NCBI GenBank assembly: GCA_964247055.1
Contig: OZ176051.1
Span: 11,904,001-11,968,000, forward strand
Source of the DNA: Paragordius varius
Lineage: Eukaryota > Animalia > Nematomorpha
Length of the DNA stretch: 64,000 nt
Reading direction: 5' to 3'
Shown: positions 4,061 to 62,100 of the stretch, in pieces
Layout: every line of letters begins with the position of its first letter
Numbering within the stretch: position 1 is the first letter of the stretch
Position numbers and translations under genes: made by a program
Notes under the pieces: generated by a model
What the model was told of the DNA's origin: nothing
Databases searched by the model: none
The model's input: only the letters and a program-made list of their open reading frames with translations

Positions 4061-5214
4061 AGTATACAATAAAAAAATGTTCAATATATTAAATATATTA
4101 ATTAAAAATTCTATGTAGAAATAAAATATACCTAACTTTTAGAACATAGAATTAAAATAAATTAAAAGCTAACCAAATTATTAAAAATCAAAAATCCAAA
4201 AATCTAAAAGGGAATTGTATGGTATGATAGATCCGGGCGGCTTGCACAACCTCTGAAAAACAACACCCCCCAAGCGCTCCTATAATTATGCCAGATATGG
4301 CAAGGTACAACGAGGTGATCTAAAAGCCCATAGGATGCAGAGAATATAACGTAGTTAAGTCAGTATAATCCAGGGAAATTGACATGTAACCAATTCACAG
4401 AATAGAGTTAGACAAATTCAACCATTAAATCGGATAAGAAGATTAGATAAATACAAGTAGTCCTATTGGGGCCCATAACTATGGTAAGATATCCTCCATC
4501 TATGCAATAACCGTTTCTGCTTAACATCCATCTGAAATTCAAAATATGGCGCATCCAACAATTTTGAAAATAAATGAAAACCACCAGTGATTAATAGGGT
4601 TTTTTGTAATAAACAACCGAAGAAAAAAAACCCTATTAACTACTAAAAATAAGCCATTCTAACAAAATGAATATAGCCTCTCTGAAAGCCCAAGGTTTAA
4701 ACGACAAAATCCCTCCTTAGTATTTTTTTATACAAATTTATACGTAAAATTAGCTTTAGAAAAACACTAGAATTAAACATTTATACCCGTACTATTTTTT
4801 TCTCCCTGTTATTTAAATGACATATTTAAATTAAAAATAAAGTTTAAAACGCTTTATGAAATGATAATATTTTTATAATATAAAATCTTTTATTACAAAG
4901 TTATATATGAATTTTTGCCTATGTTTTTGAAAAATTGAAAATCCTGTAATACCTCAAAATTCTGATTGGGGGAATCAAAATTATTTTTAGATTCGGTTTT
5001 GGAACACTAAAATTAGTCGAAATTTATTTTGAGTAGTGGTGCAAAGGTTAATTTAGTCAACTAGTGTAATTATTAAAATTTATCCATTTGGGATAATTTG
5101 CAATGCTAAAATAAAATATTATCGTAATATTTTTAAAAAAATCTATTAAAATAATAATTTGGATTGCAAAAATGATAATGGATTTTTTTCGGAAAATCTA
5201 ATATCCTCGACCCC

Positions 5215-7224
5215 CTAATGTCTATGTGGTCTCCTGTGAGCCCCATGATGTCTATAGTGTCCATGATGTCTTGTTGCACTAAACTTTAGCAACACTGTTC
5301 CATTATTCGGAGTGACCTATATAAATTATTATAATACAAATACCTTATTCAATCAAACTCAATATTTTCAACGAAACTCAACTTTTTTTTCAATCTCACA
5401 ACTTTTCGAATATTATTTTGATTGTAGTAAAAATGCTATAATAATAATACACCGATATAAACACATATAGTACTTACTGGAATTTCCAGATTATCGTATC
5501 CACGGCCACGTACATTGTTTATCAACCTTTCCCCCTCCATCCTTGTTCCCTCAGCCACAATAAGGCGTGGATGGCGTGGATTTTCCTCATTCCTTTCTTT
5601 CAATACGCACACGTTCCGTTTTTCATGTGAAGATTTTTCATCACGTCGTTCTCCCATTAGACGAGTGTTACCATGGTAATGTCTTCGGGGATGGTGTCTT
5701 TTTTTTCGTTTACTCCCTTGTAAAAGATATATTTTTTTTGGTAGGATGCGTAAAAAATTGATGTCATACAGTATTAAAATTATGCTATGGACAAAACGTA
5801 AAAATATACAGATAAATACACTTTTTGTTTCAAAAGACAATCATACTTTTTAAACCTTAATAATTTTTGTATAAAATATATATAATTGATTGTGCCACAC
5901 CTAACTCTATTTGATATTTAGCGAATTTGCACAATGATTTATATTTTAAAAAAGCATAGCGGTTATTCTTTACAAAAAAAAGATATATTTGTCCTTATAT
6001 TTTTACGTTTTGTCCAGCATAATTTCAATTTTTACTGTAATAAAATATCATGAACCAACAAAACCTTCGTCGGTGACACCTGTCGAATCGTCCGCCCCAG
6101 AAGCGTCAGAATCTGAAGTTGAAGGAGGAATTTCTTCGACAGGTTCTGTCACTTCGGGTGTTTCTGTTCCCTCCGGTTTCTCTTCGCCCGTATCAGGGCT
6201 TGTTTCCTTCGCCGTTATGGCTGTTACGTTACAGTAGACATTACTTTCGTTGATTGCAGCATCCACGTTTTTAAGAGATAGTTTACCATTAAATACTGTA
6301 GTTATATAAATTTATTAGCATAAGTAAGTCAGTCAATCCATACATATATTAATTAAAATTTTATTTTAAGTTTTTCTTACCGACATTAGCGTCGGACGTG
6401 GATCTTTCTACGTCTATCGAGATGTAACGACAATTCTCCAAGTGAATAACTTTATCGCTTTCTATATTAATATAACAATTATTAATTAAAAATAAAATAT
6501 CCCACGATAGAATTACATTTAAGTGAAATATAAGAGCAAAAGTATATATATTTAAATTTTATAAAGATTTAGCAGAAGAAAGTTTGTAATTTTTTATTTT
6601 CAATGATATGTTATTTCAAGGCGCTGTTTGTTCACCTGCTAAAAATAAGATTTTTGTAAATTATATATCATTCTAAATATTTAACCAAAAAATTGCAAAC
6701 GGCAAGACTTTCTTGGGGTAAAAATTCTAATCGCCGTAAATACCCCGTTTTTTTCAAAAAATATATGGAACCATAAGGATAAAAGGTTCGGAGCTGGTTA
6801 CAGTTATTGCACATGGTAGACTTGTGCAAAGCTCTAGACCTGAACTCAAAAAGGCAATAAATATTTGAGAAGAAATTTAATCTTAAACCCATATAAATTT
6901 CATTGGTATCCACGGTATGGTAATAATTAAGATTCTTATGGATGTATCCGCTAAACTTATGTATTTATAATTGTAATGCAAAATCTTAGCTGTAATATTT
7001 GGGAAAATAGAATATATCCTGGAAAATATGCTACCTTGTACGCTAATTTCCTTTGTCGCCTCGCCCGGTATCAAAGTTTCGTTTTTGTCATCATAAATTA
7101 TGCGACATTCCTTTGGGTGTCTGCCCATATGAAATCCTCCATGGTGATGTCCTCGGTGTCCATAGATAGACACGAAATTCAGGTATAAAACTATGGAAAA
7201 AACGGTAAGCCATTTAAGAGCCAT
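5215..7224 (-). CDS. Orphan secreted His/Arg-rich protein, ~6 exons
   Basis: Signal peptide MALKWLTVFSIVLYLNFVSIYG, then HRGHHHGGFHMGRH. The last four exons splice in frame with canonical sites: 6461-6381, 6295-6065 (acidic E/T/P/S linker), 5716-5478 (GSKRKKRHHPRRHYHG...) and 5316-5215 (...RHHGHYRHHGAHRRPHRH*). The exon 1/2 boundaries (about 7042 / 6955 / 6774) are less certain. Confidence 0.75.
5769..6037. mobile_element. Tc1/mariner-type MITE, copy 1 (in an intron of the His-rich gene)
   Basis: TA|CAGTA...TACTG|TA termini (TA target duplication). Long imperfect TIRs: ATTATGCT..GGACAAAACGTAAAAATATA and TATATTTTTACGTTTTGTCCAGCATAAT. Confidence 0.85.
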
Positions 7225-38100: not shown

Positions 38101-41100
38101 ATATACAATTTATGACGCAAAAAGATTCATCTACTATCATACATATCATACCTAACAGTTATAATACGCTTGACTTTAATGTTAAGTGTAGCATGTATTG
38201 GTTAACTCAAGACAGTACACATTATTTCATTCGTCCCTGTAATTTTCAAGCTAAAATGATCTTTTTTGAGCAAAATATTCTGATTGATATATTGGCACAG
38301 ACAAAAACGATTTCTATTTTTACAAATCCTCAAATGGTAATCATAATGAATATTTTAATATCATAAATCTATTATATTCCGATTTGATTTTATATATGTA
38401 TAATATGTATATATTTGAAATAAATAGATAACAACAATATATACCATTGCAAATCAATATAAGTCAATTTATCACAATCTATTTAACTTATATGGCAGTG
38501 ACCATTGTAATGAAAGTAATTTCCCTATTTTTTTTATTAATTAACCTTTGGGATATTTCAAAAATTATTTAATATTCCGTAATAGAAAATACTAAACTGG
38601 ATAAAGCGTTACACATTAAAGGAGCATTTAAAAGCATATCGATTACAATGTATTCTCCAAAAATGTCCGATTTAAAACCTAACGAACCGATTGATATAGT
38701 AATTACCCAAGTGATATTCCAAAATGTTTTCGGTTTTTATAAAACACAACCTTATGAGACTTACCCGCAAAATGGCTGTGAGGAAAAAGTTAAAATTGCA
38801 GGGTTAACATTGGAGGATATATGTATTCGTTCGGGAGATAAAAGCCATCAAATTAAGTAATTTAGTTTACTTTTTACGAAATATAATTATCATTTATTTA
38901 ACTTCACTTTTAGTTTAAGAATAATGTTTTATTAGCAAATAATTATCTGGAGTTGGTTTGTTCGATTTTACCGTAACCTTTATCAAGTTCTATTTGCAAA
39001 AAAAATTTATTTCACTTATAGTGATTTATCAAACGAATGTACAAAGCCTATTTTGGATATGACTTTGGATAGCGATTATGGCATTAATATACGGAGTATG
39101 CGTAGCATAAGCATGGATATTAACCTACAACATATTTTACAACATTGCGCATGTATTTTGGAGGAATGGAAAAAATTGTTTAAGTCAGGATTTGGAACGC
39201 TTAAAAATAATTTAATTGGACATGAAACTAAACATTCTTACCATATTAACGATGTCTCGATTAAAAAGGGCCTATCCTTCAATTTTAATTTTGAGGGAAG
39301 TTCGATCAATTTGATATCTGGTCCTATTTTGAGTAGTAAGCTCTTTACTCATATAAATGAAACATTATCACATAAAACAACTAAATACACTATGAAAGGT
39401 ATAAAATGTCTATATACATTGGCGTGTGATATGGACTGTAATAAAATTAGCTTTATTCATATCCCAAATGATATAATGATAGTCACTGATCAAAGTGATT
39501 TAACATTAACATATAAGATTACAATTGAGGAAATTACTAATGCCTCACTGCCAACCATATCAATTAATTTAAGTCTTGCTTTCTTTAATTTTCTATATGG
39601 CATATACACCGACGATTGGTTGAAAATTATAATTCTTTGGGATTATTTGAAATTTCAAGCCGAAACAATGGCCACAACCGATAAAAATGAATTCCTTTCT
39701 GTGCCTTTTTACGCTTGGGTAAAACAACAAAATAATCGGGCCCTTGATAAAATTAGTTCAATGTGCCGAAAAGTGAGTATACATATCCATCATATTTCTT
39801 TATCTCTTGACTTGGATCATTATGATTCATTCAATAATTTTGTTAATGGTACTAGAAAAACCCTTAAATTTAACCTGGATATATTTGATTCCGATTTTAC
39901 GATACAATATAATGGTTTGATTACAAACAATCTATCCCATTCTTGTGTCGTGTCTCATGCTAAGTATCAATGTCAACACTTTACTTTGAAGCAAAACTTT
40001 GGCAATACGATTGATGAGGAATCTAAAACGATCCTTATTCAATGTATAAAGGAAAATAAAGCAAAAAGTCAGTCCTGTAATGTTGAATATGAATCTAAAA
40101 ACAAACTTAGGACCCTTATTCAAATAAATGTCAATTGCCCTGTAGAAAGTCACATATGTTTAACGGAGGAATTAATTTCAAATTACATAAACATTTGTGA
40201 GAATTTAAAGTTTGTCCGCCATAAACCCTATTGCAATTATAATATTAATCCACAAACACATTGGGCACACGCTTGTATGATAAATGTAAATGCTCCGTTT
40301 TTAACGGTATATTTCATAATTTCTAATTATACAAAACTCAAATTGGAACTCCACCAATTATCCCTTAAAAGAGGAATAGAATCCGGCATTTCAAGTACGA
40401 TTTTGGATGTTTTATATATGGCTATTTATTTCAGTAAAACATTTATTTTAATACAAATTTTTTTATTAATTTATACACATGTATAGTTTTTCAACCCATG
40501 ATGAAAACAGTTATAAAAGCCAATTTTGTCCAATTACTGGTATCGTATCCCCAAGCTCTATCCAATCTAGAATATTTACCATTTTTAAAGGCTTCATCTG
40601 TAAAATTAACCTTAAATGTCACAAATAAAATGGATTGTCCACTCTTTGACTGTTTAAGAAAAACCGAATTTGTACCAAAATACCATAATAATATAACAAC
40701 TAATGACGAATTATATGAATATCAATTATTTCCCTATATACCATCAATGGTGCTTAAGCAGAATGTTAAATATAATAATTCTAGCGTTTTACACAATAAC
40801 ATATACTACCATTTTGAAAAGGCAAAAAATCTTACTTTTAAATGTAATTTCATCAATATTCACGGCAGTCAAATCCATGCTAAATTGTTCAAGAATTTAA
40901 TGGATTCTTACCTGAACATAAAAGTTATATATATTTTTTTTATACATTTTAAAATAAAGTTTTTTTAACAAAATATTACAATTTTAAGATATTTGCTTTA
41001 TTTAATAAATTTATGTACAATCATATTTCTTATAATATCTCAAGATTAATTATTTGGTTATTTAGGATACATATTTTAAAGTATCAACTTTATTTTAAGC

Positions 41101-44100: not shown

Positions 44101-47100
44101 CAAAGTGTAGCGATCGAGTATGCAATTATTTTATTAATTACTCTAAAATTTTTAAAATTAATTAATATTATTTAACAAAACATAATAGATTATAAATTTG
44201 TTTTTGCTTTTAATGGTTTCGCGATTTTTTGATTCCCCATAAGCATAATTTCTATTAGATGAATTTTATACGTTTTTAACTTGCTGTTTAGTTTACTTTT
44301 TTTATTTTATTCTCGCACGGATCTTACACATTTTACTAAATTTCATATATTTTAAGACTAAACGTTTTAATTGGATGCTTAATAATTATTGCAACGCTTT
44401 AATTGGATGCTTAATAATTATAGCAAAACAATTTTATTTTACTTTTTATATGACAGCTGGAGATTTCGATGTCAATTCAATAAGAATTGTCGAGGTGAGA
44501 ATGTTTATAATTTGGTGTGCGCGTTCCCAAACAATCCGCAAAAATGGTATCCCTTCTCTATAACAAAAACAATTACATCTAATCAAGCTAACACCAACAA
44601 ATCTATTGCAATAAATTACACCTCATTGAGGGCACTTTGTACGCACGAAAAAAATTCCAATAAAATGCTGGTAAGAAATTCATATTAGCAGTATCGATAT
44701 AAACGATATGTTATTTTATAAATATTTTTTAAAATTGATAATAGGTGATGTTTTTTAAATTATTAATACTAGTTACATTTTCCAGTAAACTATAAAATCA
44801 AAACGAAGGCAAAAACGTTCGCATGTTTTGATTTATCTTGGTTAAACAAATATACCGGCTTAATTTTATTTGTATATATTAGATTATTAATATTTTTGAT
44901 TTGTATTTAATTCAATTTAGATCCGCACTAAAAAATTTCTTTTAAAACATGGAGTGTTGGAGTTTAAAACATAAAGGATATCTCACAATAAACTATGAAA
45001 GAAATATTAATTACATAGAAAATATTTTAATAACTAATAAGATATTATAAATATAATTTTAAAAAGATCTTCATTACATAATTATATTTAATTTATACCT
45101 ATCTGATAAAATATTGGTGTCTTATTTAAAATTATCTATTAAAATAGTTAGGTGTAAGAAAATAGTAATAACATTTAACCACCTCCAAGAGGTTATACGA
45201 TCAAAAAACCAAACCCTTATTCCTTTATCAGGGAGGGTTGTACGCTTTTAAAAATAAAAATGGATTTCATTCAATATATTCCAAAATTGGTAGAATAGAA
45301 ATCCAAAAATTATTAAAGCAGCCCAGAAGATATTTGTGCTAAACACCTGAGAGATAAATAAATATAAAACACCATTTGAGACATAACCATTTTTATACTT
45401 TGGGTTTGAAACAATCATACAAAGTAATATATAAGATTTTAACAATTAACTAGGTTCTTATTACATTCATAAAAAATCTCATAGTACAGCATCCGAAAAT
45501 GGGATATTTTTTTACGTATTTATAATTAAGTTGATTTTGCCTTAAGAGAAACGAGAGGAATTATTTGCAAAACGATTTTGATATTTAATAAGAATAACAT
45601 TTAAAAGAATTTGCGCTTTGTCTTTTATCTTATTCTATAAACGAATTTAATTAATCCTATCAATGTTTCCGTAAATTTCAATCATTATTTATTCCAATGA
45701 TTGGTTTATTACAAAACAATCTCTCTATTAAATGTCCTTTTTTCCAAGATTATACAAACTCTGTAGTAATTGTAGAAAAATATTTGGAATTTAAACTTAT
45801 AAAATCTGTATGATAATGTTTGTGATGCTTTTAAAAATTATCAAATTCTAATAGATATTTCGAATATATATAATTTTGACTAATATCTTGTGCGATTCTA
45901 TATTTTATAAAATATCATTACATTAGAATTTCGAAATAAAATCTAATATAATTATACCAAAAAATTGGTTTTTTATAGCCAAAATGAAAAATTGTTTAAT
46001 ACCTCTTAAATGCATAATACGAAGAAACGAATTTATATTAATATTCTTCCCTATATTTAAATAAGATATGTGGGCTAGAATTCCTTATTACTCATTTTCA
46101 ACATGTTTTTTTACATTCCTGTTTGCCCATTGAATTTAGACACACATGGTTCTTCAATAGATTCTTATTTTTATCTTCCACAAGTTGTATTCAATTAAAG
46201 TGCGTATTTAAATGGTTTCCAAAATGTTTTAAAACATTTGCATGCCAAATTTTCAATAAATTTAGCAGATGATATATAACTTTTTTCATTTTATTCAAAT
46301 TCTCTTTACGGGAATTTAAGTACATTTTATAACTTAATTCATACTAATATTTTTAAGTAGTACAGATGTTGTTAAGTCGAAAAGATTGCATATTTATATT
46401 TTTGTGTTTTGTTCTAAAACAATTGGGTCAAACTACGTGTAGAAAACAAATTATTCCCCAAATAATATATCTTGACATATCGTTAATTAAAGATCCAATA
46501 GGAGTCAATTATTAAATTTGATATATAATTATAGACAAAACAAACTCGGATAATTAAAATTAAGAAATTGATAAATAATTCACAAATAATTTTTCAATTT
46601 ATCGCTTCTCTGGCTTATTAGCTATGATCGATTGTGTAGTATCTGTTCTTATCAGCTTAATATCTGATATGGTTTCTCATTGAAACCCCTGATATTAAAT
46701 CATTTTTTGTAGGTTTTGGGGATTGCTCTAGGCTTGCCTATCACTCCTCAAACGGGTCAACCTGGTATTGCACTATATCCAGGAGTGGCCCAACAATTTT
46801 ATAAACAAAATAATTACTTATGTAATAAAAATTATCATAAAGAAAAATATTGTAAAAATAATACAATGATGCATTCGGGTTTTTGACCTCTCATCAACAT
46901 GAGATGCTTGATTGTATTGGTGACAATTAATTTCTTGAGGTGCGTAGGGTAAGGGAACTTGTTTCTGTCAAAAAAGACGGTCGTTTTCGCGTACCAAGAA
47001 CAAAGGCTCTCTACAACAATTGGCATAACTTGTACACATAAGATTTTAAAATTTGATCGGAGATTATCTTTTATCAGGTCCACTAGGAGGTTGTTGAGGG

Positions 47101-50100
47101 AATGGTTTAGAATTGGAATGTGTGCTTGGATTTCTTTGGCTGCCACAACGATAGCCCAATTGTTTAGATGTTTGAGACCAATTTTCTTTGGTAGGAGATT
47201 GAGCCGCACTCGGTAGAGGTGACTCAACTTATCATCAGCAACGCACTCCACCCGACCCTGCAAAGCAAAATAATGTAGCTTAGTGGGTTCAAAACAACAG
47301 CTGAGTGATTGTCTTGGAGATAGAACTCAGAAATTTTTTTCTGAAAAGAATCATTAAAAGACCAAGAAATTTTAGATTCAGACGCCATTAACCCTCTTGT
47401 CCAAATGTTTTGGCATTTATTAGCTAGATGGAGACACAACGGTTCTCATAACCAGACAAATATTTGTCTGACTGATCGGGAGTTATAAAATCTAATTTAA
47501 CCTTACAAATGCTAGCCGACTTAAGTTCCTCGAGAGCAGAAACTCTTAAAAGCGAAATCGATACAAAATATATTGATATCATCTCAAAATAGGGCGTCCC
47601 TAAGGGGCCCGTATCACGATGCGAGCGAAATTCAGAATCTGCTCAAAAACTTTAGTCATTTTTGATCAAGAAATTCTCGTGTTACCATTTTGAATCATTA
47701 TTTCTCAATTGGGAAATAGTGGGATAGAAGAGGGTTTTTATTGCTTCAAGCTTTTGCCACGGAAGGAGGTTAGAGCTATGGATTTTATCGGGAATTTTTC
47801 TAGAAGGAACGGGTTTGTGAGGTTGACACCGGGCTTACCTAAAAACTTAAAAAAACAATAATTATGAAGAAATGTTTGGATTGTTGTTTGTTTCATTTCG
47901 TCCACTCATAAAGAAGTGAAACATATCGCATGACGCTTTAATGACGTCCGATATGATCAGCTTCCTCTCGAAGATTACGCCATTGTTGCAGCAGGAGCCC
48001 AGAGATCCAACGACGATCGGGATGACCTCGACATCATTAAGGCGCTCTCGCAGTCCAGTGGCGAAGGATTCGTACCTGATAAGCTTGTTTGTTGCGGCCT
48101 GATGGAGTGAGGATAGCCGAATTTTATATGGTACCGTGGGATCGATGATGAAGCAGGATGATTCATCGTGACGATTCTTGATTCTCGCTGATGACTTGGA
48201 AGTTTGGTGGTAGCGCCTCCTTGATCCGATTTATTAGATTGTGTCTCTTGGCTATTAGATTGCTCTCTTTTAAACAGTTATTGAGAACATGGGCGGGGGC
48301 TTCGTTATCTTTGCCACATCGTCGACATTTCAGTGTTGGGTCGTGTTTACGAGAATTGGTGGGGAGAAGATTGAGCCTGGCGCGATGAATGAATTTTCAA
48401 TCAAATAATCTCATGTGTTTTGCTGTAAAAAGAAAAGAATAGCTGGCCCGATCGGCAGCTACACATTCCATAACTCGCCTTGCAGGACTAAGTGATGGAG
48501 TTCTGCATCTTTTAGCGCACGCTGAGTGCGTCTGAGCATCGAGACTACGTTGTTCGATACGGAGTCGTTTTTTATCAACTATTAATGTGGGAGAGGAATT
48601 GATAAATTCCCATTTGATCTTAAGGAACTGAGATGATTTCCGTGCCTCTGTCCAAGGGTGTTGAGCTTTGTTGCTCGGGTTTCTAACGTCCGGATTATTA
48701 TTGCCGGAAAGAGAGGAAGCCATATCCTCCGGAGTTGGGTTTGTAACATTTAATCTATAGGCTGTTGTTTTTGAGAGCACGGCGAGCGACTCTGTTTTAA
48801 TTGATTCGTCGCGGGAGGTTAGCAGTTTGAAAGCGGAATCTATTCTAAATATATGCATGTCATCCTTTAGGAGAAGCATGCCGAGAGCACCTTTGGTGGA
48901 CACGTGGATATAGTTTATGGTGGCGTCTTTTGGAAGAACCAATATTTGTTTGATTATTGTAGTCAATTGTTTATCTATTGCATCCGAGGTATTGCAATTG
49001 ATTTGATTAAAGCGCAATCTGTGTGTGAGTGTGGGATAATAGAATGTTTTTATAGGGTCAAGCTTTTACCAGGCGGCCAGCTTGTAATTTAATATTTTTT
49101 GCGGGATTTTAGTATTTGCGGCTGGTCTTTGAATGTCCAACCCAACCGGGTTACCTAAGAAGTTTGTATATTCGTGGTGTTGTAAGGTTTTAATAATGCC
49201 ATCATCAATTGAGAACTGGTAAGTTGCATTAAGAGAAAAGGTGACACACTTGGAAGAATTTATTGTAAGACCGATTTCACCAAGGAGGAATGTGAGTCGG
49301 TCAAGCGCCGCTTGGTGGAGATGTGGGTTTGGCGATAAGCAAGCCATATCATCCGCATACGCAAGTATTTCGTGACTGTGATTACTTATTTTCTCAATTA
49401 TTGAATTAACGGCAACGTTAATTAAGGTGTTGAGTGGGCAGCCCTGTTTGATGCCGGAGAGGAAGGGGATTTGGTTTGTCAGTCCATGGGATGTCATGAA
49501 AGCTGTGGATAGGATGAGTTTGTATAGATAATTTAAATGATATTAATGAAGCTCTTGGATAGGCCGAAAAGGGTGAGGCCATTGAAGATGGCTTGGTGTG
49601 GAAGGCTATCGAAGGCAGCATCAATATCGATCCATGTTATGAACAATGAGGATTTACTGTGCACCGCTGTTTTGATTTTTTTCGATCACCTAGTTGTGTT
49701 CGAAGCGCCCATCATAGGGGAGGAAACCCTTCTGTTTTGGAGACATGAGATTATTGTTATTGGTGTACTGGATGATTTGATCTGATAAAATGGCTGTAAA
49801 AAGTTTATATTGTATTTGTTAACGAGATTGGACGCCACCCATTAATTTTACTCAAATTTCTTTTTGGGACCAAGATCGAGATGGAAGATTTCCAAGCATC
49901 AGGTATGCGTTGGTGATTGAGACAAATATTGTAAATAGCTGAGAGTAGTTTACCATTATTGTCTATTTTTAACCATTTTTGATAAGTGACGCCGTCATTG
50001 CCGGGGGAAGACTTTGGCATTTTTTTAAGCTTGTCGACTATTGTTTTTGGCAAGATTAGCTCCATGTCTAAAACATTGTCGTGGGATGTGATTGCAGGTA

Positions 50101-53100
50101 CCGAATTTAGCGTATAAGAACGTCCGATCAAGGATTTAAAATGAGATTCAATCACCTGGGGATCGATTTTACAGGACTTGGGCGGGCCTTCCATGATAAG
50201 ACGCATCGCCTTTCGTCTATTAAAACGGTATAGCTTTTGTAGGTAACGTGGGTTAGGATTTTCAATTGAGAATTTCTTGGGATTTTAGAAGAACGAGGAG
50301 AACTATGGTACCGGATGATATCATCCAATATTTCCTCGAATCTGGCCCAGGGATCCGGGTGAGAACTGATATTATTTAATTCGTTGATAAAATCGGGTGG
50401 TTTGTTATTATTATCAGGTATTAAATAGTTTGACCGGCCTTCCAAAGGCGGAGTAATAGAGTGTGGTACGTCTGGTTCAACTTCGCAAATATTCGAAGTG
50501 GATGGAGCATCATCCTCGATTGGATATTCTAATATTGAAAACCTATTATTGCAGGTGACTGTATCGCTAGCGTTAAAAGTTTGATGGGCAAACTTGTGAC
50601 AGTGACTTTTAACTGGGGATTTCTGTCGGACAGGTTTGTTATCAGGGTTAAATTTAGTATCAAGAAGCGAAGTCGCTTTCTCATGATGGCGTATTGGAGC
50701 ATTATGTGAACGAATGTGATGATCCAGATTACTTTTTTTGGGATATGTTTCGCCGCAAATGTTGCATTTGTGCGGGAATAGAGTTTTGGGGATCTCGTGC
50801 CGCGATTGTAACTTTGAATGTCCATTAAAAAATTGTAGTCACATATGGCCATGAAGTGAATGGCTAAACCCAATTCCTCCCGAGGCACCTCACCTTAAAC
50901 TACAAATTTAGGACTGAAGTCCGGAATTATAAACCTGGCGATTTGGATGTGGGACGCTATCCTTCATAACACTTATAATCGTGCCACTGGCACGAGCTCC
51001 CTAAAACTCTATTCCCCCACAAATGCAACGTTTGCGGCGAAACATATCCCAAAAAAAGTAATCTGGATCATCATAATCGTTCACATAATGCTCCAAAACT
51101 CCATCATGAGAAAGCGACCTCGCTTCTTGACACCAAATTCAATCCTGATAACAAACCCGTCCAACAGAAATTCTTAGTTAAAAGTCACTGTCGACAGTTT
51201 CCCCAACAAACTTTTAACGCTAGCAATACAATCACCTGCAATAATAAGTTTTCAATATTACAATATTCAGTCGAGAATGATCCTCATCTTCAAATATTTG
51301 CGAAGTTGAACCAGACTCATTACACTCTATTACCCCTCCTTTGGAAGGCCGGTCAAACTATTTGATACCTGATAATTACAAACCACCCGTTTTTATCAAC
51401 GAATTAAATAATATCAGTTCTCACCCGGATCCCTGGGCCAGATTCGAGGAAATATTGGATGATATCATCCGTTACCACAGTTCTACTCGTTCTTCTCAAA
51501 ACGATCCCAATAAATTCTCAACTGAAAATGCAAACCCACGTTACCTACAAAACCTATACCGTTTCAATAGACGAAAGGCGATGCGTCTTATCATGGAAGG
51601 CCCGCCCAAGTCCTGTAAAATCGATCCCCAGGTGATTGAATCTCATTTTAAATCCTTGATCGGACGTTCTTATACGCTAAATTCGGTACCTGCAATCACA
51701 TCCCACGACAATGTTTTAGACATGGAGCTAATCTTGCCAAAAACAATAGTCGACAAGCTTAAAAAAATGCCAAAGTCTTCCCCCGGCAATGACGGCGTCA
51801 CTTATCAAAAATGGTTAAAAATAGACAATAATGGTAAACTACTCTCAGCTATTTACAATATTTGTCTCAATCACCAACTCATACCTGATGCTCCATCTCG
51901 ATCTTGGTTCCCAAAAAGAACCAAGATTTGAGTAAAATTAATGGGTGGCTTACAATCTCTTTAACAAATACAGTATATAAACCTCTTACAGCCATTTTAT
52001 CAGATCGAATCATCCACCAATAACAATAATCTCATGTCTCCCAAACAGAAGGGTTTCCTCCCCTATGATGGGTGCTTCGAACACAACTACGTGATCGAAA
52101 AAAATCAAAACAGCGGTGCACAGTAAATCCTCATTGTTCATAGCATGGATCGATATTGATGCTGCCTTCGATAGCCTTCCACACCAAGCCATCACAATGG
52201 TTTCACCCTTTTGGGCCTATCCGAAAGCTTCATTAATATCATTTAAAATATCTATACAAACTCATCCACAGCTTTCATGACATCCCATGGACTGACAAAC
52301 CAAATCCCGTTCCTCTCCGGCATCAAACAGGGCTGCCCCTTTTCTGGCACCTTATTTAACGGTTAATTCAATAATTGAGAAAATGAGTAATCACAGTCAC
52401 AAAATACTTGCGTATGCGGATGATATGGCTTGCTTATCGCCAAACCCACATCTCCACCAAGCAGCGCTTGACCGACTCACATCCCTCCTTAGTGAAATCG
52501 GTCTAACCATAAATATCTCCAAGTGTATCACCCTTTGCCTTAATGCCAATTACCAGTTCTCGATTGATGATGGCATTATTAGAACTTTTTAACACCACCA
52601 ATATACAAACTTCTTGGGTAACCCAGTTGGGTTGGACATTGGACCTGCTCAAAATCCTGAAATCCCGCAAAAATATTAAATCCCAAGCTGGCCCCCTGGC
52701 AAAAGCTTGACGCTATAAAAACATTCTATTATCCCAGACTCTTGCACAGACTGCGCTTTAATCAAATCAATTACAATACTTCGGATGCAATAGATAAACA
52801 ATTGACTACAGACAAATATTGGCTCTTCCAGGAGATAACCACAAACTATATCTACGGGTCCAAGCTCAAAGGTGCTTCTGCATGCCTCTCCTAAAGGATC
52901 ACATGCATATATTTAGAATAGATTCAGCTTTCAAACTGCTAACCTCCCGCGACGAATTAATTAAAATAGAGTCGCTCGCCGAGCTCTCAAAAACAACAGC
53001 CTATAGATTAAAAGTTAAAAACCGAACTCCGGAGGATATGGCTTCCTATCTTTCCGGCAATGATAACCCAGACGTTACAAACCCTAGCAATAAAGCTCAA

Positions 53101-56100
53101 AACCCTTGGACAGACACGTAAATCATCTCAGTTCCTCAAGATCAAATGGGAATTATCGATTCCTCTCCCACCTAATAGTTGATAACGACTCGGTATCGAA
53201 CAACGTTCTTCCGTAGTCTCGATGCTCAGACGCACTCGACGTGCGCTAAAAGATGCAGAACTCCATCACTTGGCCCTGCAAGAAGGAGTAATGGAATGTG
53301 TAGGTACCGATCGGGCCAGTCATTCTTTTCTTTTTACAGGAGAACACATGTTCCGTGATTGGAAATTCATTCATCGCGCCAGTCTCAATCTTCTCCCCAC
53401 CAATTCTCGGTAACACGACCCAACACTAAAATGTCGACGATGTTGCAGAGACAACGAAACCTCGCCCACGTTCTAAATAACTGCTTGAAAGAGAGCAATC
53501 TAATAACCAAGAGAGACAACCTAATAGTAAATCGGATCAAGGAGGCGCTACCACCAAACTTCCAAATCATCAGCGAGAATCAAGAAGTTGACTCATCCCG
53601 TCTCCGCCCGGACCTAATCGTCACTGATGGATGATCCTGCTTCATTATCGATCCCACGGTACCACATAAAAATCGGCTATCCTCACCCCATCAGGCCGCA
53701 ACCAACAAACTTATCAAGTACGAATCAATCGCCACTAGACTGCAAGAGCGCTTCAATGGTGTCGAAGTCATCCCGATCGTCGTTGGATCTCTGGGCTCCT
53801 GGCACTGCAACAATGACGTAATCTTCGACAGGATTCCTATCAAGATTCCAAACCTCTGAAAGAAATTGATCATATCAGACGTCATCAAAGCATAATGCCA
53901 TATGTTTCACTTTATTATGTATGAAATGAAACAAACAACAATCCAAACATTTCTTCTTAATTAATGTTTTTTTATTTTTATATTACGCAAATTGCATCAT
54001 TGTTCCCATACAATTTTATCCATATTCACTCTTTAATTGTTAGATAGGCCACTTACATTTTTGTATCTTATTTCAGATTCTTAATTTATAATAAAAATAT
54101 AATAACTTTCAAATAAATTCTCTGTTCTTATCAGCTTAATATCTGATATGGTTTCTCATTAAACCCGTGATATTAAATCATTTTTTGTAGGTTTTGGGGA
54201 TCGCTCTAGGCTTTAGGCTTGCCTATCATTCCTCAAACGGGTCAACCTGGTATTGCTCTATATCCAGGAGTGGCCCAACAATTTTTATAAATAAAATAAT
54301 TAAAAAAAAATCTTTTTAAATATTTCTAACAAAAATTATCGTCAGCTAACTGTTTAAAACAATTTACTACAGCATTAAAATTCATTTTATTCAAGTACAT
54401 TAGTTTACCGTGAACGCCTAGAAAAGAAAAATGTAAAAATAATACAATGATGCATTCGGGTTTTTGACATCTCAATATTGTATTGGTGACAATTGATTTC
54501 TTGAGGTGCGTAGGCTAATGGAACTTGTTTTTTCAAAACGGTCGCTTTTCGCGTACCAAGAACCAGGGCTCCCTACAACAATTAGCATAATTTATACACT
54601 TAAGATTTTCAAATTTAATGGGAGATTATCTTTTATCAGGTCCACTATGTCGTTGTGTCTTTTGTTTAATATATTATCATCTTTGATGTAATGGTTTAGA
54701 ATGTGGGCTTGGAATTCTTCGGACTTGCCACAACCACGGCATGTTTGATCATATGTGAGACGTATTTCGTTGGTAGGAGATTGAGCGGCGCTCGGTGGAT
54801 GAAATTCCAGTCTCTAATACGGAGACTTTATTATTGTAAAATATATGACTGACCTTATTATCAGCAAAGCACTCCATCACCCGACCCAAAGCAAAATGAT
54901 GCAGCTCAGTTTAATTTTCGTTTATAAATCGGAGGTTAAAAACAACAAAACGATTGTCTTCGGAGATTTTAGCGAACTAAAAAATTGTAGGCTGAAAAGA
55001 TTCATTAAAAGACCAATAAATTTTAGATCCAGACGCCATTTTCGCTATTGTCCGAATGTTTTGGCTTTTATTATCTGGATCTGACACAACTGTTCTTATA
55101 ACCGGACAAATATTAGCTTAACAGATAGGGAATTATAGAATCAAAACGAACCTAAAACGAAAGCTAGCCGACTTAAGTTCCCCGAGATTAGAAACTTTTA
55201 TAAAAGGATCCATGCTAGTAGTAACCTAAAGGCGAAATCGACACGAAATATATACTGTCTTGAAATAGGGTCATCCCTAAAGCGTTATTACTACGAGACC
55301 CAAAAATATAATTGTTAGTCTTATCCCATATTCTCCTGTTACATGTTTAAATTATTTCTCAATTGGTGAGAAATAGTGGGATAAAAAAGGTTTTTATTGC
55401 GTCTTTCCATGGAAGGATTTTAGCTATGAATTTTATCCACGATTTCCGTAGAAGAAACGGGATTTATGAGGATACTTAAGAGCCTGGAAACTTTATACAC
55501 TCACATGGAACAGCAACTTCGCCAATTTTAAATATAAAACTGGTGCGATAGAAATTTTATTGTACTTTTCTGCTTTGATCGAAAGACCAATATCATAGAC
55601 ATTTTAAGCCCTTGATGACGTTCAGAAGAAGGCAATAAAACAATGTCATCAGCATAAGCGAGGACATTGTGACCATTAAACACCATAGATATCAACACAG
55701 AATCGATAGACATGTCAAAAAGAAGGCCAGAAATTGGACACCCCTGTTTAATGCTAGACAAGAAAGGAATGGGTTGCGTTAACCCAGAGGCGGAAAAGAA
55801 CTGAGTGCATGAATTTGTGTAAATATCCTTAATTAAAGCTTTACCAAAATTAGAAAGACATTCGAAAATCAGCTGGTGAGGGACCGAGTCAAACGCAGCC
55901 GTGATATAAATAAAAGTTACAAAAATATCTTTTTTATTACGTTTAGCATCAGAAATTGATTTATTTAAAAAATAATTATGCTTAAAGCAGCCATCAAAAG
56001 GCATAAATCCTTTCTGAGCTGATGATAATAAGTTATTCTTTTTAATATGCTTAGAAATACGGTTGGCAATAAGGCCAGTAAATAATTTTTAAATCGTATT

Positions 56101-59100
56101 GCTTAGAGAAAGAGGCCTTTAACTTGAAACAAGAGATAGTCTCCTTTTTTTTAGAATGTAAACTTGACTTAGTTATCCAATGATTAGGAATCATTCTATG
56201 ACTTAAACACAAATTAAAAATTTTAGCTAAAAGAATACCTTTGGGATCCACCTGCTTCCATTTGGTATATGAAATACCATCAGGACCAGGGGAGCTGTTA
56301 GAAACTTTTCTTAGTTTATCAGAAACTTCAGATGCTGAAAAGGGAATAAAATCAAGTAAAGGGACAGAATTATTAGAATAATTAAAATTAATAGGCTCCG
56401 ATTTTTTGCCAATTGTATTGTTAAAATAATTAGTTATATCTTCGTTATTAATTTTACAAGAGGATGGAGGGCCATCAACGATTTATAGCCTTTTTCCTAT
56501 TTTTTCTATACATGCTACGAATATTTATATCTTTTTGAACCAAACTTTTAGACTTATTATAATCAGCCCGGGGAGGAGATAATGCATTTTGAATAGATCT
56601 TTTTAAAAAACAAACGTCCTCCCAGTCTGAATTCTCTTAGTAAAAGGAAAAGTATTTTTATATAAAGCACAGTATTTATTAAAACTTTTATTTGGTTGAG
56701 GTGGAGTAACCGATGAAGTGGGTTCCTCATCAACACCCTCCTCAAGAATAGTAAAACGATTAGATAAAGAGACCTCATTTTTAGAAAAGTAATTAAAATA
56801 ATTTTTGTTTACCGAACTACTTGAATTTAGAATATTATAATTTTTATCCATACTGGAATTATTGCCTTCATGCCCCTTACCAATGATGTTTGAGGTCCCA
56901 CTCACTTTGGTAGGAGAAGAATTAACTGGAGAGCTTGGTGGATCAACAAAGTTTACTGAATGGGTTGGAGATGACTCGACAACCTTAGGCTTGTTAAACG
57001 GATTAAATCCGAGGTTAGACAAACTTGAGTGTTTGGTATGAGGATAAGGAGATGGATTATGAGACCTTTTATGAGCTAGTAATTGGTAAGTGATACGAAG
57101 GCAATAATTCCAATGCAGATATCAATTTAAGTATTCTAATCCCAGTGATAGTTCGGTAAACAAAAATTATTTTAATTGCTTTTCCAATAATGAGGTCCCT
57201 TTATCTAATCGTTTTAGTATTCTTGGGGAGAGAGTTGATAAGGAACCCTATTTATCGTCTACTTTATCCCACCAAATAAAAATGTTAAATAATATTTTTC
57301 TCTAAATAAAATACTTTTTACTTTTAATAACCTTCTCGATTCCCACGAAGATAATTCAGACTGGGAGGATATTTGTTCTTTAATGCTATATCAAGCATTG
57401 TCTCCTCCCCAGGCTGATTATAATAAGTATAAAAGTTTGGTTCATAAAGATATAAATATTCGTAGCATGTATAAGAAAAATAGGAAAAAAGCTATAAGAT
57501 TAATCGTAGATGGCCCTCCATCCTCTTGTAAAATATATAATGAAGATATAATTAATTATTTTAACAATACAATTGGCTTAAAATCGTATTAATTTTAATT
57601 ATTTTAATAATTCTGTTCCTTTACTTGATTTTATACCTTTTTCATCATCTGAAGTTTCTGATAAACTAAAAAAAAGTTTCTAACAGTTCCCCTGGTCAGA
57701 TGGTATTTCATACCAAATGGAAGCAGGTGGATCCCAAAGGTATCCTTTTAACTAAAATTTTTAATATGTGTTTAAGTCATAGAATCATTCCTAATCATTG
57801 GAAGATAACTATGTCATTTTAATTTCTAAAAAAAGGGAGACTCTTCTCTTGTTTCAAGTTGGAGGGCCCTTTCTCTAAGCAATACTATTTATAAATTATT
57901 TACTGGCCTTATTGCCCAACTGTATTTCTAAGCATATTTTAAAGAATAACTTATTATCATCAGCCTAGTTATGCCTTTTGATGGCTGCTTTGAAAACAGA
58001 TATTTTTGTAATTTTTATACGGCTGCGTTTGACTCGGCCCGTCACCAACTAAATTTTAGATATCACCCTAATTTTGGTATAAATTATGGCATTCAAGCTT
58101 TAATTAAGGATATTTACACAGATTCGAATACTCTGTTCATTTCCACCTCTGAGTTAACGCAACCCATTCCTTTCTTGTCTGGCATTCAACAGGGATGTCC
58201 AATTTCTGGCCTTCTTTTTAACTTTTCTATCGATTCTATGTTGAGATCTATGGTGTTTAATGATCAAAATGTTCTCGCTTATGCTGATGACATTATTTAA
58301 TTGTCTAACTCTAAGCGTCATCAAGTTGGGTTTAACCTGTTGGAATGTCTAATTAATGATATTGGTCTCTCAATCAAAGCAGAAAAATGCAATAATATTT
58401 CTATTACTGCTTGTGGATTATTTAAGATTGGCCAATTCGTTATCCCTTTAATTGTTTAAGGTGAGTTTGTTAAGTTACTTGGTAAGCTCATCAACTACAT
58501 AAATCCCGTTCCTTCTATGGTAATCGCTAGCTCTAACCTTCTTCCGTGGCAATTGACGCAAAAACCTTTTTCTATTAAATTACTAGTAGCTTGGATCCTT
58601 CTATAAGAGTTTCTGCTCTCGAGAAACTTAAGGTGTCGGCTTTTTCAGGTTCTATCTCCAAGACAATCGCTCATCTGTTGTTTCTCACCCTCGAATTTAT
58701 AAACGAAAGTTAAAGGATACTGAGCTACATCATTATGTTTTTCAGGGTCGGGTGATGCACAGCGTTGCTGATGATAAGGTCAGTCATCACTTACTATACA
58801 ATAAGGACCTTTGTTTTGGACACTGGAATTTCACCCACCGAGCGCGGCTCAATCTCCTACCAACGAAAATGCGTCTCAGGACATCTGAACAATTGTGCCG
58901 TCTTTGTGGCAGTCCAAAGAAATCCAAGCACTCATTCTAAACTATTCAATAATAATATGCCAAAAGACACAACTTCATAATAGACCTGAAAGATTATTTC
59001 CCTTCAAATTTTAAAATCTTAAGTGAGAGAGAGACTATGCCTTGACTTCATTGTAAAAATTGCAGATTGCTTTGATTTCACACTACTTTTAAAAACATGC

Positions 59101-62100
59101 TAAAAACGTTCGAAACCGCTTATAACAAATAACTAATAAAATATAGCTCAATGTTTCATCAATTACAAGAGACCTACAGCAAAACTCAAGTTATCCCAAA
59201 TGTTGTAGGGAGCCTCGGTTCGTGCTACGCAAAAAAACGACATTGTTTTTGACAAAATCGATTCTCGTTACTTTGCGCAAATCAATTGTCATCAATAAAT
59301 TTAAATCATATTGCGACATGTACCATATGTTTATGAGCAGTCGAAATTCCCTCATAGACAACAAGCCGTGACCTACTGCATAATTGTGATATTTTTTTAT
59401 ATATTTTCTTTTTTCATTTATTATATATATAATATTATTATGTTCCCTTCTTGTCCCATGTACTTCGCGCCCAACATTGTTGCCTAGAACATTTCTTCGT
59501 ACATTCTAAAATATATTTTTTAGTATATCTGGTTTATACTATTTTAGACCAAGACTGTTATATTGTCTGGAAGACTTCTTTTGTCGCTCCTTAAAAGTAC
59601 AATAGAGAACAAACCTTTTAAGTCAGGAGTGTCTATTCGGCTTTTATAGAACACAAAATATAATATTTAAGAAACTAAGGTAAAAATTCTTAAAGAAATT
59701 TTTTCAATGTTGCCTTTCAAATTTGGAGCGAAAATGGTTCAAATAAATACTTTTAATGTCGTATTTTATTTTAGTATCTCCGAATTCTAATAAAATATTT
59801 ATTATATACTTTGATTCTGACCTCCGAATTTTTAATCGTAACCACCCCTGTTTACTCCAAGGTTAAACTAGTACAAACTATTAATTGTTTTCCCTTTTAC
59901 GATTTCCGAAAGAAGCTTCTTAATATAACCAGATAATGGGTAAATCATTTTGACAAAAATATGGTACATATTAACAAAACCGGTTAAATTGAATAGTTTT
60001 AATCATAATAAAACACAGGTCCTAATAAGACCCTTCTCAACTTTTTGTAAATCGTCATCGAGAGATATGTTAGATTATAGAAAAGTATAATATATATGTT
60101 ATATAAATAGTGATAATGAGAATTTAATTCAATTCGGTTTTTATTTTGTTTAAATTAATATGTATAAAAAATTTATTAAAATGAAACCAGGTACAGATGG
60201 TTAGCAATTTGGCCGTTATTAATGAAACCAACATCCCTATTCGTATTGGAATAAAACATGATTGCAAAACTGCTAATGTTGATTTTTATGAAGCTGTCAC
60301 CAACGAAATAGTTTTTATACCAATATCCTTAATTCAACTCAAAGATACGAATGTTAAGACGGTGGTGTGTCAGTTTTATTGTAAAGATGTTTTGATTGCC
60401 GAAATTCCTATCAATGATTGTCAGAGTAAACTTTATACTATATATTATGAACTAAATATAAATTACATAGTACACCCCTTATAATTTTGTTATAAAAAAT
60501 AAACATTGCATGCATAATATTATTTGCAAGTTCCTTATCGAAATTCGAAAGGACTTAATCAGAAAATATAAATTTAACATTTGTAATAACATATTCTTGC
60601 AAATTAGGAAATTTGTTATTTGTAATTTTTGAAATTTCTGGGCGGCACTTATACCTTAAAGGACCTTATTTTGGCATGCTTTGTTTTGACACCCCTCATT
60701 TATCATATGATACACAGTCTTATAATATAATTTTGTTTTTATTAATATTACGTTCCTATACATTAAGTCAAGCGTGAATGTTTTTATCGTACTAATAAGT
60801 AACCAGTTGATAAATTGATAATCATTTTCAGCCAAATATAATTTTATTCACAAATTTAATGCAAACCATCTCTCACTTTTTATAAAACGTTCCGGGAATT
60901 ATTTTATAAATATTTACATATATGTTTACATAAACAACTCTATAATATTTTGGTATTGCATAGAACATGAACTGCGTATTCCAGCCAATAATGATTTGAA
61001 AGAATCTATGAAATACTGTTATGTCTACATGGTGGGATGCGGGCACGATATAATGCAACATGAATCATGCACACTTATAAAAATTTTACCGGCTCTTAGA
61101 ATCACCTTCCCCTACCTTTCCTTACTCATTAGCGATAAGGATAAACTTTATACTTTGGAAGCTAGAATACAACAGTCTGAAAATTTGTCATCCAACAACA
61201 CTGAAGCAATTACAATAGATAACAGACATAATAATACTATTTATAAAGAAAAATCGCCTATGAAAAAGGATGAAAATCCTGGATGCTCACAATCTTCAAA
61301 TTGCAATTCTATTTACGATTTTTATTCGTTCAGTCACAATAGCTTTGCCGAAACTGTTAATGGCGACGATATCAACACCTCTTATGTGGAACTAAGTTTG
61401 AGGTTTTTAAGGGTTATATATTTTGAATTTAAATTCAAAGTTTGAAGTTTATTATTTGTAGAAGGATTTAATTATACGGCACGATACCGTGATATAGAAA
61501 CACTTATTTTCATCTATTCATCAATGAATATTCAACAGTTTATAAATTATATTATTCAATAGAGATGTCATTGCCAACAAAATCATGCTAAATTTTTGTG
61601 TACCAAACTATTTAATTCAAGATCTTTTTAATGATATAGTCAATTTTACGCGAAGAGATTACGAGGAATTCGTTAGCGCCCATATGTTGAAAGAACACAA
61701 AGAAATTGTATTAAACGAAGGGAACTTGAATTTAATTGCCGGGTATTATATAAATTATTCATGTTTTAATCGAATACCTCTAATATTTATTTTATTGGCA
61801 GTACCATAGAAAATTATCCAATATACCCTGGACTCTTGGTAGTCCTCAACAAAGATCCCACGCTCTCAAATAACGATAAAATTGGTTCAATAAATCCGAG
61901 CTCCTCATTAACCCTAAATTTAAATGTACCCTTGATTTCGTTCTCACCAACACTCTGTTTAATGGATAAATGTTTAAACATTAGTTTTAATGCCCTAATT
62001 ATTAACGATACGAATTTAATCTTTCACGTAATGTCGGCATATAGCGATGTTTTGCAAACGATACCTCCTTATAGGAGCTGTATTCTGGAGTACCCTAAAA

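What the first reader, a model, noticed from the sequence alone, without database searches (positions are those of the whole stretch)
50950..54280. R2-like retrotransposon inserted precisely in U2 snRNA (Utopia-type) in a short-intron animal lineage
Seen: a near-full RLE non-LTR element (C2H2 finger, RT, CCHC knuckle, PD..D..K endonuclease). Its 3' end (…AATAAATTC, no poly-A, no microhomology) is fused exactly to U2 at GTAGTA|TCTGTTC, and an intact U2 7.5 kb upstream shows the uninterrupted site. Known: Utopia elements (NeSL/R2-like RLE group) target U2 at this position, about nt 38 of canonical U2 as I recall. Inference: this is a sequence-specific, U2-targeting family. If the host is a myxozoan, dicyemid or orthonectid it would extend the known range. 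It recognises a U2 whose upstream sequence differs from canonical, which is informative for defining the target and for site-specific integrases.
Basis: partly seen in the sequence, partly recalled or inferred. Interest (0 to 1): 0.82.

Follow-up and report, generated by a model that had tools for sequence, protein, structure and literature searches.

The report
Dead Utopia retrotransposon in U2 gene
This is a broken, mirror-duplicated copy of a known kind of jumping gene (Utopia) that lands at one exact base of U2 splicing-RNA genes; it is ordinary, already described biology in what is probably a new host phylum, and the scan has already found working relatives elsewhere in this genome.

Summary
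Rfam finds an intact U2 at 46601-46798 and a 5'-cut U2 at 54121-54283. The cut copy begins at TCTGTTCTTATCAG, directly after an element 3' end with no poly-A. That is the published Utopia/Keno site (U2 nt 38|39, human numbering).

The element ("family A") has a C2H2 finger, RT (YADD), CCHC, RHN and PD..D..K. It is not near-full. It is two inverted arms (47840-50801 minus, 50871-54120 plus), about 92% alike. Both lack the N-terminal ~180 aa and are full of stops and frameshifts.

Genome-wide, 32 of 37 sampled U2 copies are cut at this base by several related families, three with intact ORFs. All four complete family A 3' ends abut U2, but they may stem from only one to three insertions.

The nearest proteins (39% identity) come from arthropods and a turtle, and all five loci checked end at the same U2 base.

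The six rows from this genome (four U2 families, A as two arms, plus a U1 snRNA-targeting family) form one clade.

The host is probably a horsehair worm, which is only partly tested.

Verdict: a new, dead member of a known kind. The scan already reported Utopia and the U1 family on other DNA of this genome.

The parts
46601..46798 (+). Uninterrupted U2 snRNA gene of a variant type. Stem I and the U6-pairing region are altered and stem-loop II has compensated changes. The target site is intact, at 46641|46642.
   Evidence: Rfam RF00004, 154 bits, model positions 1-192. Alignment with the canonical U2 copies of this genome.
46903..47854 (-). Old 3' fragment of an F1/B-type Utopia element lying downstream of the intact U2. 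It is part of a unit (U2 plus flank) that is duplicated at 54121-55203.
   Evidence: tblastn and blastn against the intact F1 element. Direct repeats D1-D8.
47840..50801 (-). Family A left arm. It is an inverted copy, 5'-truncated, and lacks the last ~135 nt of the 3' UTR, so it has no U2 junction. C2H2 at 50704-50766, YADD at 49348-49362, CCHC at 48274-48327, RLE at 48072-48152.
   Evidence: Inverted repeats I1-I25. MAFFT alignment of the two arms. tblastn frames and stops. Motifs. RVT_1 E=1.4e-11.
50802..50870 (.). Centre of the palindrome. No match to F1. The same centre is present in the second nest at C2:11991579-11991745.
50871..54120 (+). The coding remnant runs from F1 residue ~189 to 1262 (50871-53919) and the 3' UTR is 53920-54120, ending ...aaataaattc. 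There is no poly-A.
   Evidence: RVT_1 E=1.3e-7 on one piece.
54121..54283 (+). 3' part of a variant-type U2 gene, starting exactly at the Utopia site. Its 5' half is absent from the window.
   Evidence: Rfam. Pattern search for the U2 5' end finds only 46601. Alignment.
54477..57078 (-). Family B arm: a degenerate F1-type Utopia, 83% nucleotide identity to F1, covering F1 positions 1313-4298. It is inverted relative to its partner.
   Evidence: Inverted repeats I5, I10-I20.
57082..59528 (+). Family B arm, the partner of the previous part, head to head with a 3-nt gap. It covers F1 positions 1507-4531. No recognisable U2 follows it.
   Evidence: Rfam finds no third U2 in the window.

Best explanation
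The feature is a dead copy of a Utopia-type non-LTR retrotransposon: a single ORF with C2H2 finger(s), reverse transcriptase, a CCHC knuckle and a PD-(D/E)xK restriction-like endonuclease.

Inferred mechanism, by analogy with R2 and as proposed for Utopia:
1. The protein binds the conserved U2 sequence around the branch-point-recognition box GUAGUA.
2. It nicks the bottom strand between U2 nt 38 and 39 (human numbering; 41|42 in this variant U2).
3. It uses the nick to prime reverse transcription of its own RNA. This gives a base-exact 3' junction without poly-A.

Intact sister families in this genome show the other side. Their 5' junctions lie 0-4 bp upstream in U2 and there is no target-site duplication.

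Shown history of this copy: the element-plus-U2 unit was duplicated in inverted orientation, giving a head-to-head palindrome. The palindrome region is present twice, about 37 kb apart. Patches of the arms were homogenised. All copies have since decayed by 8-15%. Family A therefore has no working copy left, while families F1, F2 and F3 still have intact ORFs in U2 genes.
For: - Site and junction. The published Utopia site is in PMC4640811.
- Domains: RVT_1. C2H2, YADD, CCHC, RHN, RPDL..D..K..KY align with F1, F2, F3 and arthropod relatives. The intact sister protein F1 matches solved R2 proteins over both the RT and the CCHC+RLE region, E 2.5e-65. F1 and F3 have no APE domain.
- Specificity of family A: all 4 complete 3' ends are followed by the U2 3' part.
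- Specificity of the clade: 32 sampled U2 copies are cut at this base and 5 are uninterrupted. Full-length F1, F2 and F3 copies have U2 5' halves ending GTGT|, GTAG| or GTAGTA| and U2 3' halves starting TCTGTTC.
- Relatives: the best hits are 39% identical over RT and RLE. Orchesella, Adelges, Trichonephila, Pelodiscus and one metagenome contig all end at |TCTGTTCTTATCAG.
- Trees: the six rows from this genome (four U2 families, A as two arms, plus the U1 family) form one clade (SH-aLRT 99; 100/99). It sits among U2-flanked arthropod elements. Family A is sister to F1 (94; 95/96).
- History: arm alignment, second nest, four-copy comparison.
Against: - No Repbase reference sequences (Utopia, NeSL, R2, R4, Hero) could be put in the tree, so membership of the NeSL clade rests on target, architecture and U2-flanked relatives.
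- The family A junctions may stem from only 1-3 independent insertions, because the C2 copies are largely segmental duplicates.
- The U2 5' half is missing, so this copy shows only one of the two junctions.
- Clade membership alone does not guarantee U2 targeting. A U1-targeting family nests in the same clade, and F1 has off-target copies.
- Nicking position and target-primed reverse transcription are inferred, not shown.
Confidence: 0.9

Rival explanations
1. The element is a restriction-like-endonuclease retrotransposon of another lineage, such as an R2 or R4 superclade offshoot, that reached the U2 38|39 site by convergence. In that case it is Utopia-like in behaviour but not a Utopia by descent.
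For: Solved R2 proteins are clear homologues of F1 over RT and RLE. Automatic names of the nearest database proteins say 'R2'. Keno shows that this site can be reached convergently. No reference Utopia or NeSL sequence was in my trees.
Against: The R2 matches are far weaker (224 bits) than matches to U2-flanked arthropod and turtle elements (650 bits). A relative from Pelodiscus sinensis, a published Utopia host, ends at the U2 site and sits in the same tree. No Myb domain was detected.
Confidence: 0.06
2. Family A was never U2-specific. The exact junction arose once by chance or rearrangement and was then multiplied by segmental duplication inside a U2/Utopia-rich nest.
For: All family A copies lie in two nests, C2:11.95-11.99 Mb and C3:4.52 Mb. 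The C2 copies share one palindrome centre and look like duplicates. Two junctions are identical over the 45 nt shown upstream and the 30 nt downstream.
Against: The junction is at the same base as 31 other cut U2 copies. At least three sequence-distinct family A junctions exist...aaattc|TCTG...aaattc|TCTA and ...aaatta|TCTG. Family A is sister to a family with proven two-sided U2 insertions. No family A 3' end lies elsewhere.
Confidence: 0.03
3. The element is a Keno-type (APE endonuclease) retrotransposon, which uses the same U2 site.
For: Keno has the same 3' flank as Utopia. The N-terminus of family A is missing, so an upstream APE domain cannot be excluded from this copy alone.
Against: CCHC plus PD..D..K lie downstream of the RT in both arms. 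The intact sister families have a C2H2 N-terminus and no Exo_endo_phos domain.
Confidence: 0.01

Closest known systems
Utopia (U2 snRNA gene-targeting RLE non-LTR retrotransposons, NeSL clade; Kojima & Jurka 2015, PMC4640811)
   Same: The insertion base is the same, with the U2 3' flank starting at TCTGTTC (nt 39). The architecture is the same: a single ORF with ZF - RT - ZF - RLE. 3' junctions are precise and 5' junctions variable. There is no target-site duplication, as in arthropod Utopia. Cut U2 copies outnumber intact ones, and several diverged families coexist in one genome's U2 genes, as in Phytophthora and Nasonia. Some families have off-target copies.
   Different: The host phylum, probably Nematomorpha, is not in the paper's Table 1. 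This copy is dead, 5'-truncated and palindromic. There is no RNase H (the oomycete feature) and no Ulp1 protease (the Trichinella/NeSL feature) by Pfam. A U1-targeting branch sits inside the same host clade.
Keno (APE-type non-LTR retrotransposon of U2 genes)
   Same: The 3' flanking U2 sequence is identical.
   Different: Keno carries an apurinic/apyrimidinic-like endonuclease N-terminal to the RT. The element here has a C-terminal CCHC + PD..D..K endonuclease.
R2 (28S rDNA-specific RLE retrotransposon; solved structures 9nl3, 9dou, 8gh6)
   Same: The RT - CCHC - RLE layout is shared, and the motifs C-x2-C-x7-H-x4-C, RHN, PD, D and K..KY align. Integration is presumed to be target-primed reverse transcription, giving an exact 3' junction without poly-A.
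   Different: The target is U2, not 28S. Similarity is much lower than to U2-flanked elements. No Myb domain was detected. No HDV-like ribozyme was detected at the 5' ends of the intact sister families.
NeSL-1 (nematode spliced-leader-specific RLE element)
   Same: According to the 2015 paper it belongs to the same broad clade. It also targets a small RNA gene.
   Different: Its target is the spliced-leader gene and it has an N-terminal Ulp1-like protease, which was not found here.

Membership tests
Utopia | 3' end abuts U2 snRNA at nt 38|39 (flank begins TCTGTTCT...) | tested here: met
   Window junction at 54120|54121 and intact site at 46641|46642. All 4 complete family A 3' ends meet this.
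Utopia | Restriction-like (PD-(D/E)xK) endonuclease C-terminal to the RT, preceded by a CCHC zinc knuckle; no APE domain | tested here: met
   CCHC at 53432-53484, RPDLIV at 53605-53622, IIDPTV at 53641-53661, KLIKY at 53707-53721. F1 aligns to the R2 RLE region in the PDB. F1 and F3 have no APE domain.
Utopia | One to three N-terminal zinc fingers and one ORF | tested here: met
   One C2H2 finger is retained at 51024-51086. Intact sister families have single ORFs of 1162-1403 aa. The N-terminus of family A itself is missing.
Utopia | RT groups with Utopia families inside the NeSL clade in a tree with reference elements | tested here: inconclusive
   No Repbase references were available. As a proxy, family A nests with F1, F2 and F3 among elements from Orchesella, Adelges, Trichonephila and Pelodiscus that all end at the U2 site. 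R2 proteins in the PDB are far more distant.
Utopia | Target-site alteration typical of the group (no TSD or a small deletion in arthropod-type Utopia) | tested here: inconclusive
   This cannot be tested on family A because its 5' junction is lost. The sister families F1, F2 and F3 show 0-4 bp deletions and no TSD.
Keno | APE-type endonuclease N-terminal to the RT | tested here: not met
   Pfam finds no Exo_endo_phos domain in F1 or F3. RLE motifs are present in family A.
R2 | Insertion at the R2 site of 28S rDNA, with a Myb plus ZF N-terminus | tested here: not met
   The flank is U2. Pfam reports no Myb match in F1 or F3.

The most novel reading that the evidence does not exclude
Family A belongs to a host-restricted radiation of Utopia elements in which one branch changed its target from U2 to U1 snRNA genes. 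That branch is sister to F1 plus A and its protein is about 46% identical to F1.

- A full-length copy with a 1289-aa intact ORF sits between about 20 nt of U1 5' end and the U1 3' part.
- The tree joins it with F1 and A at 100/100 support.
- An AU test rejects a U2-only clade (p = 2.6e-5). The group was named after the tree had been seen.

The 2015 Utopia paper lists no U1-targeting retrotransposon. [quoted passage not shown]

Comparing the closely related U2- and U1-specific proteins could locate the residues that read the target. This lies outside the window, and the scan has already reported it from other windows.
Probability: 0.6. Interest if true: 0.6.

Novelty: new member of a known kind. 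Interest (0 to 1): 0.3.

Why it matters
On its own this copy matters little. It is a decayed example of biology described in 2015.

It is useful in three ways:
- It adds a probably nematomorph host to Utopia's range.
- It shows a fourth, extinct family beside three intact ones, all living in a pool in which only about five sampled U2 copies remain uninterrupted. This is the same puzzle of survival in a tiny target pool that was raised for Phytophthora.
- It anchors the tree in which a U1-targeting branch arises among U2-targeting ones, which could help define how these site-specific integrases read their targets.

Tried and rejected
**Host identity**
- The single-copy 477-aa window ORF (39053-40486) has no homologue at E<=1e-3.
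- An HSP70 exon gives 82-87% identity to animals of many phyla, so it shows only 'metazoan'.
- Enolase and HSP90 are too finely split into exons for the length filter of the search.
- The mitochondrial contig did give a partial answer. Zero-spacer palindromes of 262 and 194 nt lie inside ORFs. This trait is published for Nematomorpha (PMC6649704; seen only as title and abstract).

**Ribozyme**
- No Rfam family other than U2 matches the intact elements at E<=1, so no HDV-like ribozyme was detected at their 5' ends.

**Trees**
- The AU test on the 48-row tree did not finish. It was rerun on 18 rows.
- Reference Utopia, NeSL, R2, R4 and Hero sequences are in Repbase and could not be brought in without typing them, so that tree was not made.

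**Consensus of the two arms**
The arms were read through with X at each break.

**Other readings**
- Twin priming as the origin of the head-to-head pairs was rejected, because the arms overlap over almost their whole length.
- The family B plus-strand arm was checked for a U2 flank. Only about a dozen doubtful bases follow it.
Full report
**1. What is in the window**

Rfam finds two U2 matches. One is a full gene at 46601-46798 (154 bits). The other, 54102-54283 (95 bits), aligns to the model only from the base corresponding to 54121.

The sequence reads ...caaataaattc|TCTGTTCTTATCAG at 54120|54121. The intact copy reads GTGTAGTA|TCTGTTC at 46641|46642. There is no poly-A, and no base is shared between the element end and the U2 sequence upstream of the site.

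A search for the U2 5' end finds only 46601, so the cut copy has lost its 5' half.

**2. The element**

The element upstream of 54121 is one arm of an inverted pair.
- The left arm is 47840-50801 on the minus strand.
- The right arm is 50871-54120 on the plus strand.
- The arms are 92% identical over aligned bases, with 36 indels.
- Identity is uneven, 87% to 99% per 250-column block, which suggests exchange between the arms.

Pfam RVT_1 hits pieces of both arms. Read through with X at every break, and aligned with intact relatives, both arms show these motifs:
- a C2H2 finger (C-x2-C-x12-H-x4-H)
- YADD
- a CCHC knuckle (C-x2-C-x7-H-x4-C)
- RHN (RDN in the right arm)
- PD..D..K..KY; the RPDL stretch itself falls in a break in the left arm

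Both arms are dead. The right arm has at least 6 frame changes and about 17 stops. The left arm has at least 3 frame changes and about 8 stops. The longest ORFs are 196 and 206 aa.

Homology to the intact relative starts at its residue ~182-189. About 180 N-terminal residues and the 5' UTR are therefore missing, and 'near-full' overstates it.

The arms have 40-42% G+C against 27% for the rest of the window.

**3. The neighbourhood is a nest**

- The roughly 950 bp after each U2 copy are duplicated.
- That flank is itself an old fragment of another Utopia family on the minus strand.
- A second head-to-head pair, family B, occupies 54477-57078 (minus) and 57082-59528 (plus). It is 83% identical to family F1.
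- A second nest at C2:11,982-11,993 kb repeats the variant U2 and the family A palindrome with the same centre. It also holds an F1 copy and further A fragments.
- Among the four palindrome arms, the informative sites weakly favour the pairing that puts palindrome formation before the duplication: 13 sites against 9 and 2.

**4. The genome**

The assembly is 110.6 Mb in 44 contigs. Rfam finds 35 U2 matches above the family cut-off and 11 partial ones.

At the 37 U2 sites I could read (window plus 34 fetched loci):
- 5 copies are uninterrupted at the site. Two are canonical, two are the variant type and one has a mutated site.
- 32 are cut at exactly this base.
- Each cut copy follows an AT-rich end that closes with an AATAAA-like motif a few bases before the junction.

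Pairs of U2 5' and 3' halves lie 4.3-5.5 kb apart and enclose intact ORFs:
- family F1: about 1265 aa
- family F2: 1162 aa
- family F3: about 1403 aa

Their 5' junctions fall at GTGT|, GTAG| or GTAGTA|. That is a 0-4 bp deletion with no target-site duplication.

Family A exists only in the two C2 nests and at C3:4.52 Mb. Its four complete 3' ends all abut U2. Two of these junctions are identical over the 45 nt shown upstream and the 30 nt downstream, and the C2 copies are largely duplicates. The number of independent family A insertions is therefore between one and three or four.

**5. Comparison with what is known**

Kojima and Jurka (PMC4640811) defined Utopia as follows:
- RLE non-LTR retrotransposons whose 3' flank is U2 from nt 39
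- a ZF - RT - ZF - RLE protein
- precise 3' junctions and variable 5' junctions
- no target-site duplication in arthropods
- cut U2 copies outnumbering intact ones
- several families per genome
- specificity that varies by family

Every one of these points is matched here, either by family A itself or by its intact sister families. Keno uses the same site but has an APE endonuclease, which is not the case here.

F1 matches solved R2 proteins over both the RT and the CCHC+RLE region at E 2.5e-65 and 224 bits. It matches arthropod proteins much better, up to 650 bits and 39% identity.

I fetched the loci of five of these relatives: Orchesella dallaii, Adelges cooleyi, Trichonephila clavata, Pelodiscus sinensis and one metagenome contig. 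All five end at |TCTGTTCTTATCAG. Pelodiscus sinensis is a Utopia host in the 2015 paper.

**6. Trees**

I built a 48-row quick tree and an 18-row careful tree.
- All six rows from this genome form one clade, with support 99 and 100/99.
- That clade lies next to the U2-flanked arthropod elements.
- Family A is sister to F1, with support 94 and 95/96.

No Repbase references were available, so formal placement in the NeSL clade remains untested.

It is listed under referred steps.

**7. The variant-U2 claim**

The intact U2 in the window differs from the canonical copies in stem I and the U6-pairing region. It also has compensated changes in stem-loop II.

The cut copy's 3' half is of this variant type, so family A probably entered a variant-type gene. 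However, the 5' half is gone, the nine bases just upstream of the site are the same in both types, and two other family A junctions carry a canonical-type marker (GATACG) in the first 30 nt of their 3' halves. The claim cannot be settled.

**8. Host**

My protein searches show only that the host is an animal.

The mitochondrial contig carries zero-spacer palindromes of 262 and 194 nt inside ORFs. This trait is published for Nematomorpha (PMC6649704). It agrees with other agents' notes but is only a partial test. Nematomorpha is not in the 2015 host table.

**9. Seen on the way**

The same host clade contains a family inserted in U1 snRNA genes.
- A full-length copy with a 1289-aa ORF lies between about 20 nt of U1 5' end and the U1 3' part.
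- Two 99.6% identical, 5'-truncated copies lie outside U1.
- The family groups with F1 and A at 100/100.
- An AU test rejects a U2-only clade, p = 2.6e-5, with the caveat that the group was named after seeing the tree.
- The scan already reported this family from other windows.

F1 also has off-target, 5'-truncated copies with exact 3' ends in an unrelated repeat.

**10. Verdict**

This copy is a dead, rearranged member of a known kind in a probably new host phylum. The scan has already found Utopia, including intact copies, on other DNA of this genome.

Noticed in passing
L060 (G000:C6:3723500-3731000), element about 1650-5742; also L061 and L062: A related RLE family sits inside a U1 snRNA gene. 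About 20 nt of U1 5' end lie upstream, a 1289-aa intact ORF follows, and the U1 3' part lies downstream. Two 99.6% identical 5'-truncated copies lie outside U1. In trees it nests among the U2-targeting families (100/100; AU p = 2.6e-5). The scan already reported it from other windows.
   Followed up: partly
L064 (G000:C7:4860000-4866500) and L065 (G000:C1:11507500-11514000): Two F1 copies, 93-95% identical to the intact F1 and 5'-truncated, end at the exact element 3' end (...aataaattata). They are followed not by U2 but by similar repeat sequence (CTCAATCAAAATATT and ACAATCAAATTATT). These are off-target insertions, possibly with a preferred secondary site.
   Followed up: partly
Window 54100-54120; L006-L014, L035-L055 junctions: The intact families and family A end in AATAAATT plus 1-4 bases just before the U2 junction; older cut copies on C3 end in looser AATAAA-like variants. 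Arthropod and turtle relatives end in AATAAA-like motifs. This could be a poly-A signal or a 3' recognition element for the reverse transcriptase.
   Followed up: no
Window 46601-46798; G000:C2:11982449-11982646: A variant U2 with altered stem I and U6-pairing region, and compensated changes in stem-loop II. The two copies are nearly identical in the U2 body but about 86-90% identical in the upstream flank. It could be a functional variant or a pseudogene kept similar by conversion.
   Followed up: partly
Whole genome: Only two canonical uninterrupted U2 genes were seen, at C1:15223126 (7.6 kb from the contig end) and C3:526786. Many cut copies lie within 10 kb of contig ends (C4, C6, C8) or in a C3:257-527 kb cluster.
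   Followed up: partly
Window 54477-59528: A second head-to-head palindrome, made of a different Utopia family (B, F1-type), with only 3 nt between the arms. Two adjacent palindromes of different families suggest a local tendency to inverted duplication.
   Followed up: partly
G000:C7:8516000-8736000: An RLE fragment of about 107 aa recurs roughly every 20-30 kb over 220 kb. It looks like a large tandem repeat that carries a Utopia-like remnant.
   Followed up: no
L015 (G000:C44:5980-10320): The mitochondrial contig has zero-spacer palindromes of 262 nt (95%) and 194 nt (99%) inside ORFs, and a tandem array of 72-nt palindromic units upstream of COX1.
   Followed up: partly
Window 39053-40486 (+): A single-copy 477-aa ORF with no Pfam domain and no homologue at E<=1e-3 among 5.8 billion proteins.
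   Followed up: partly
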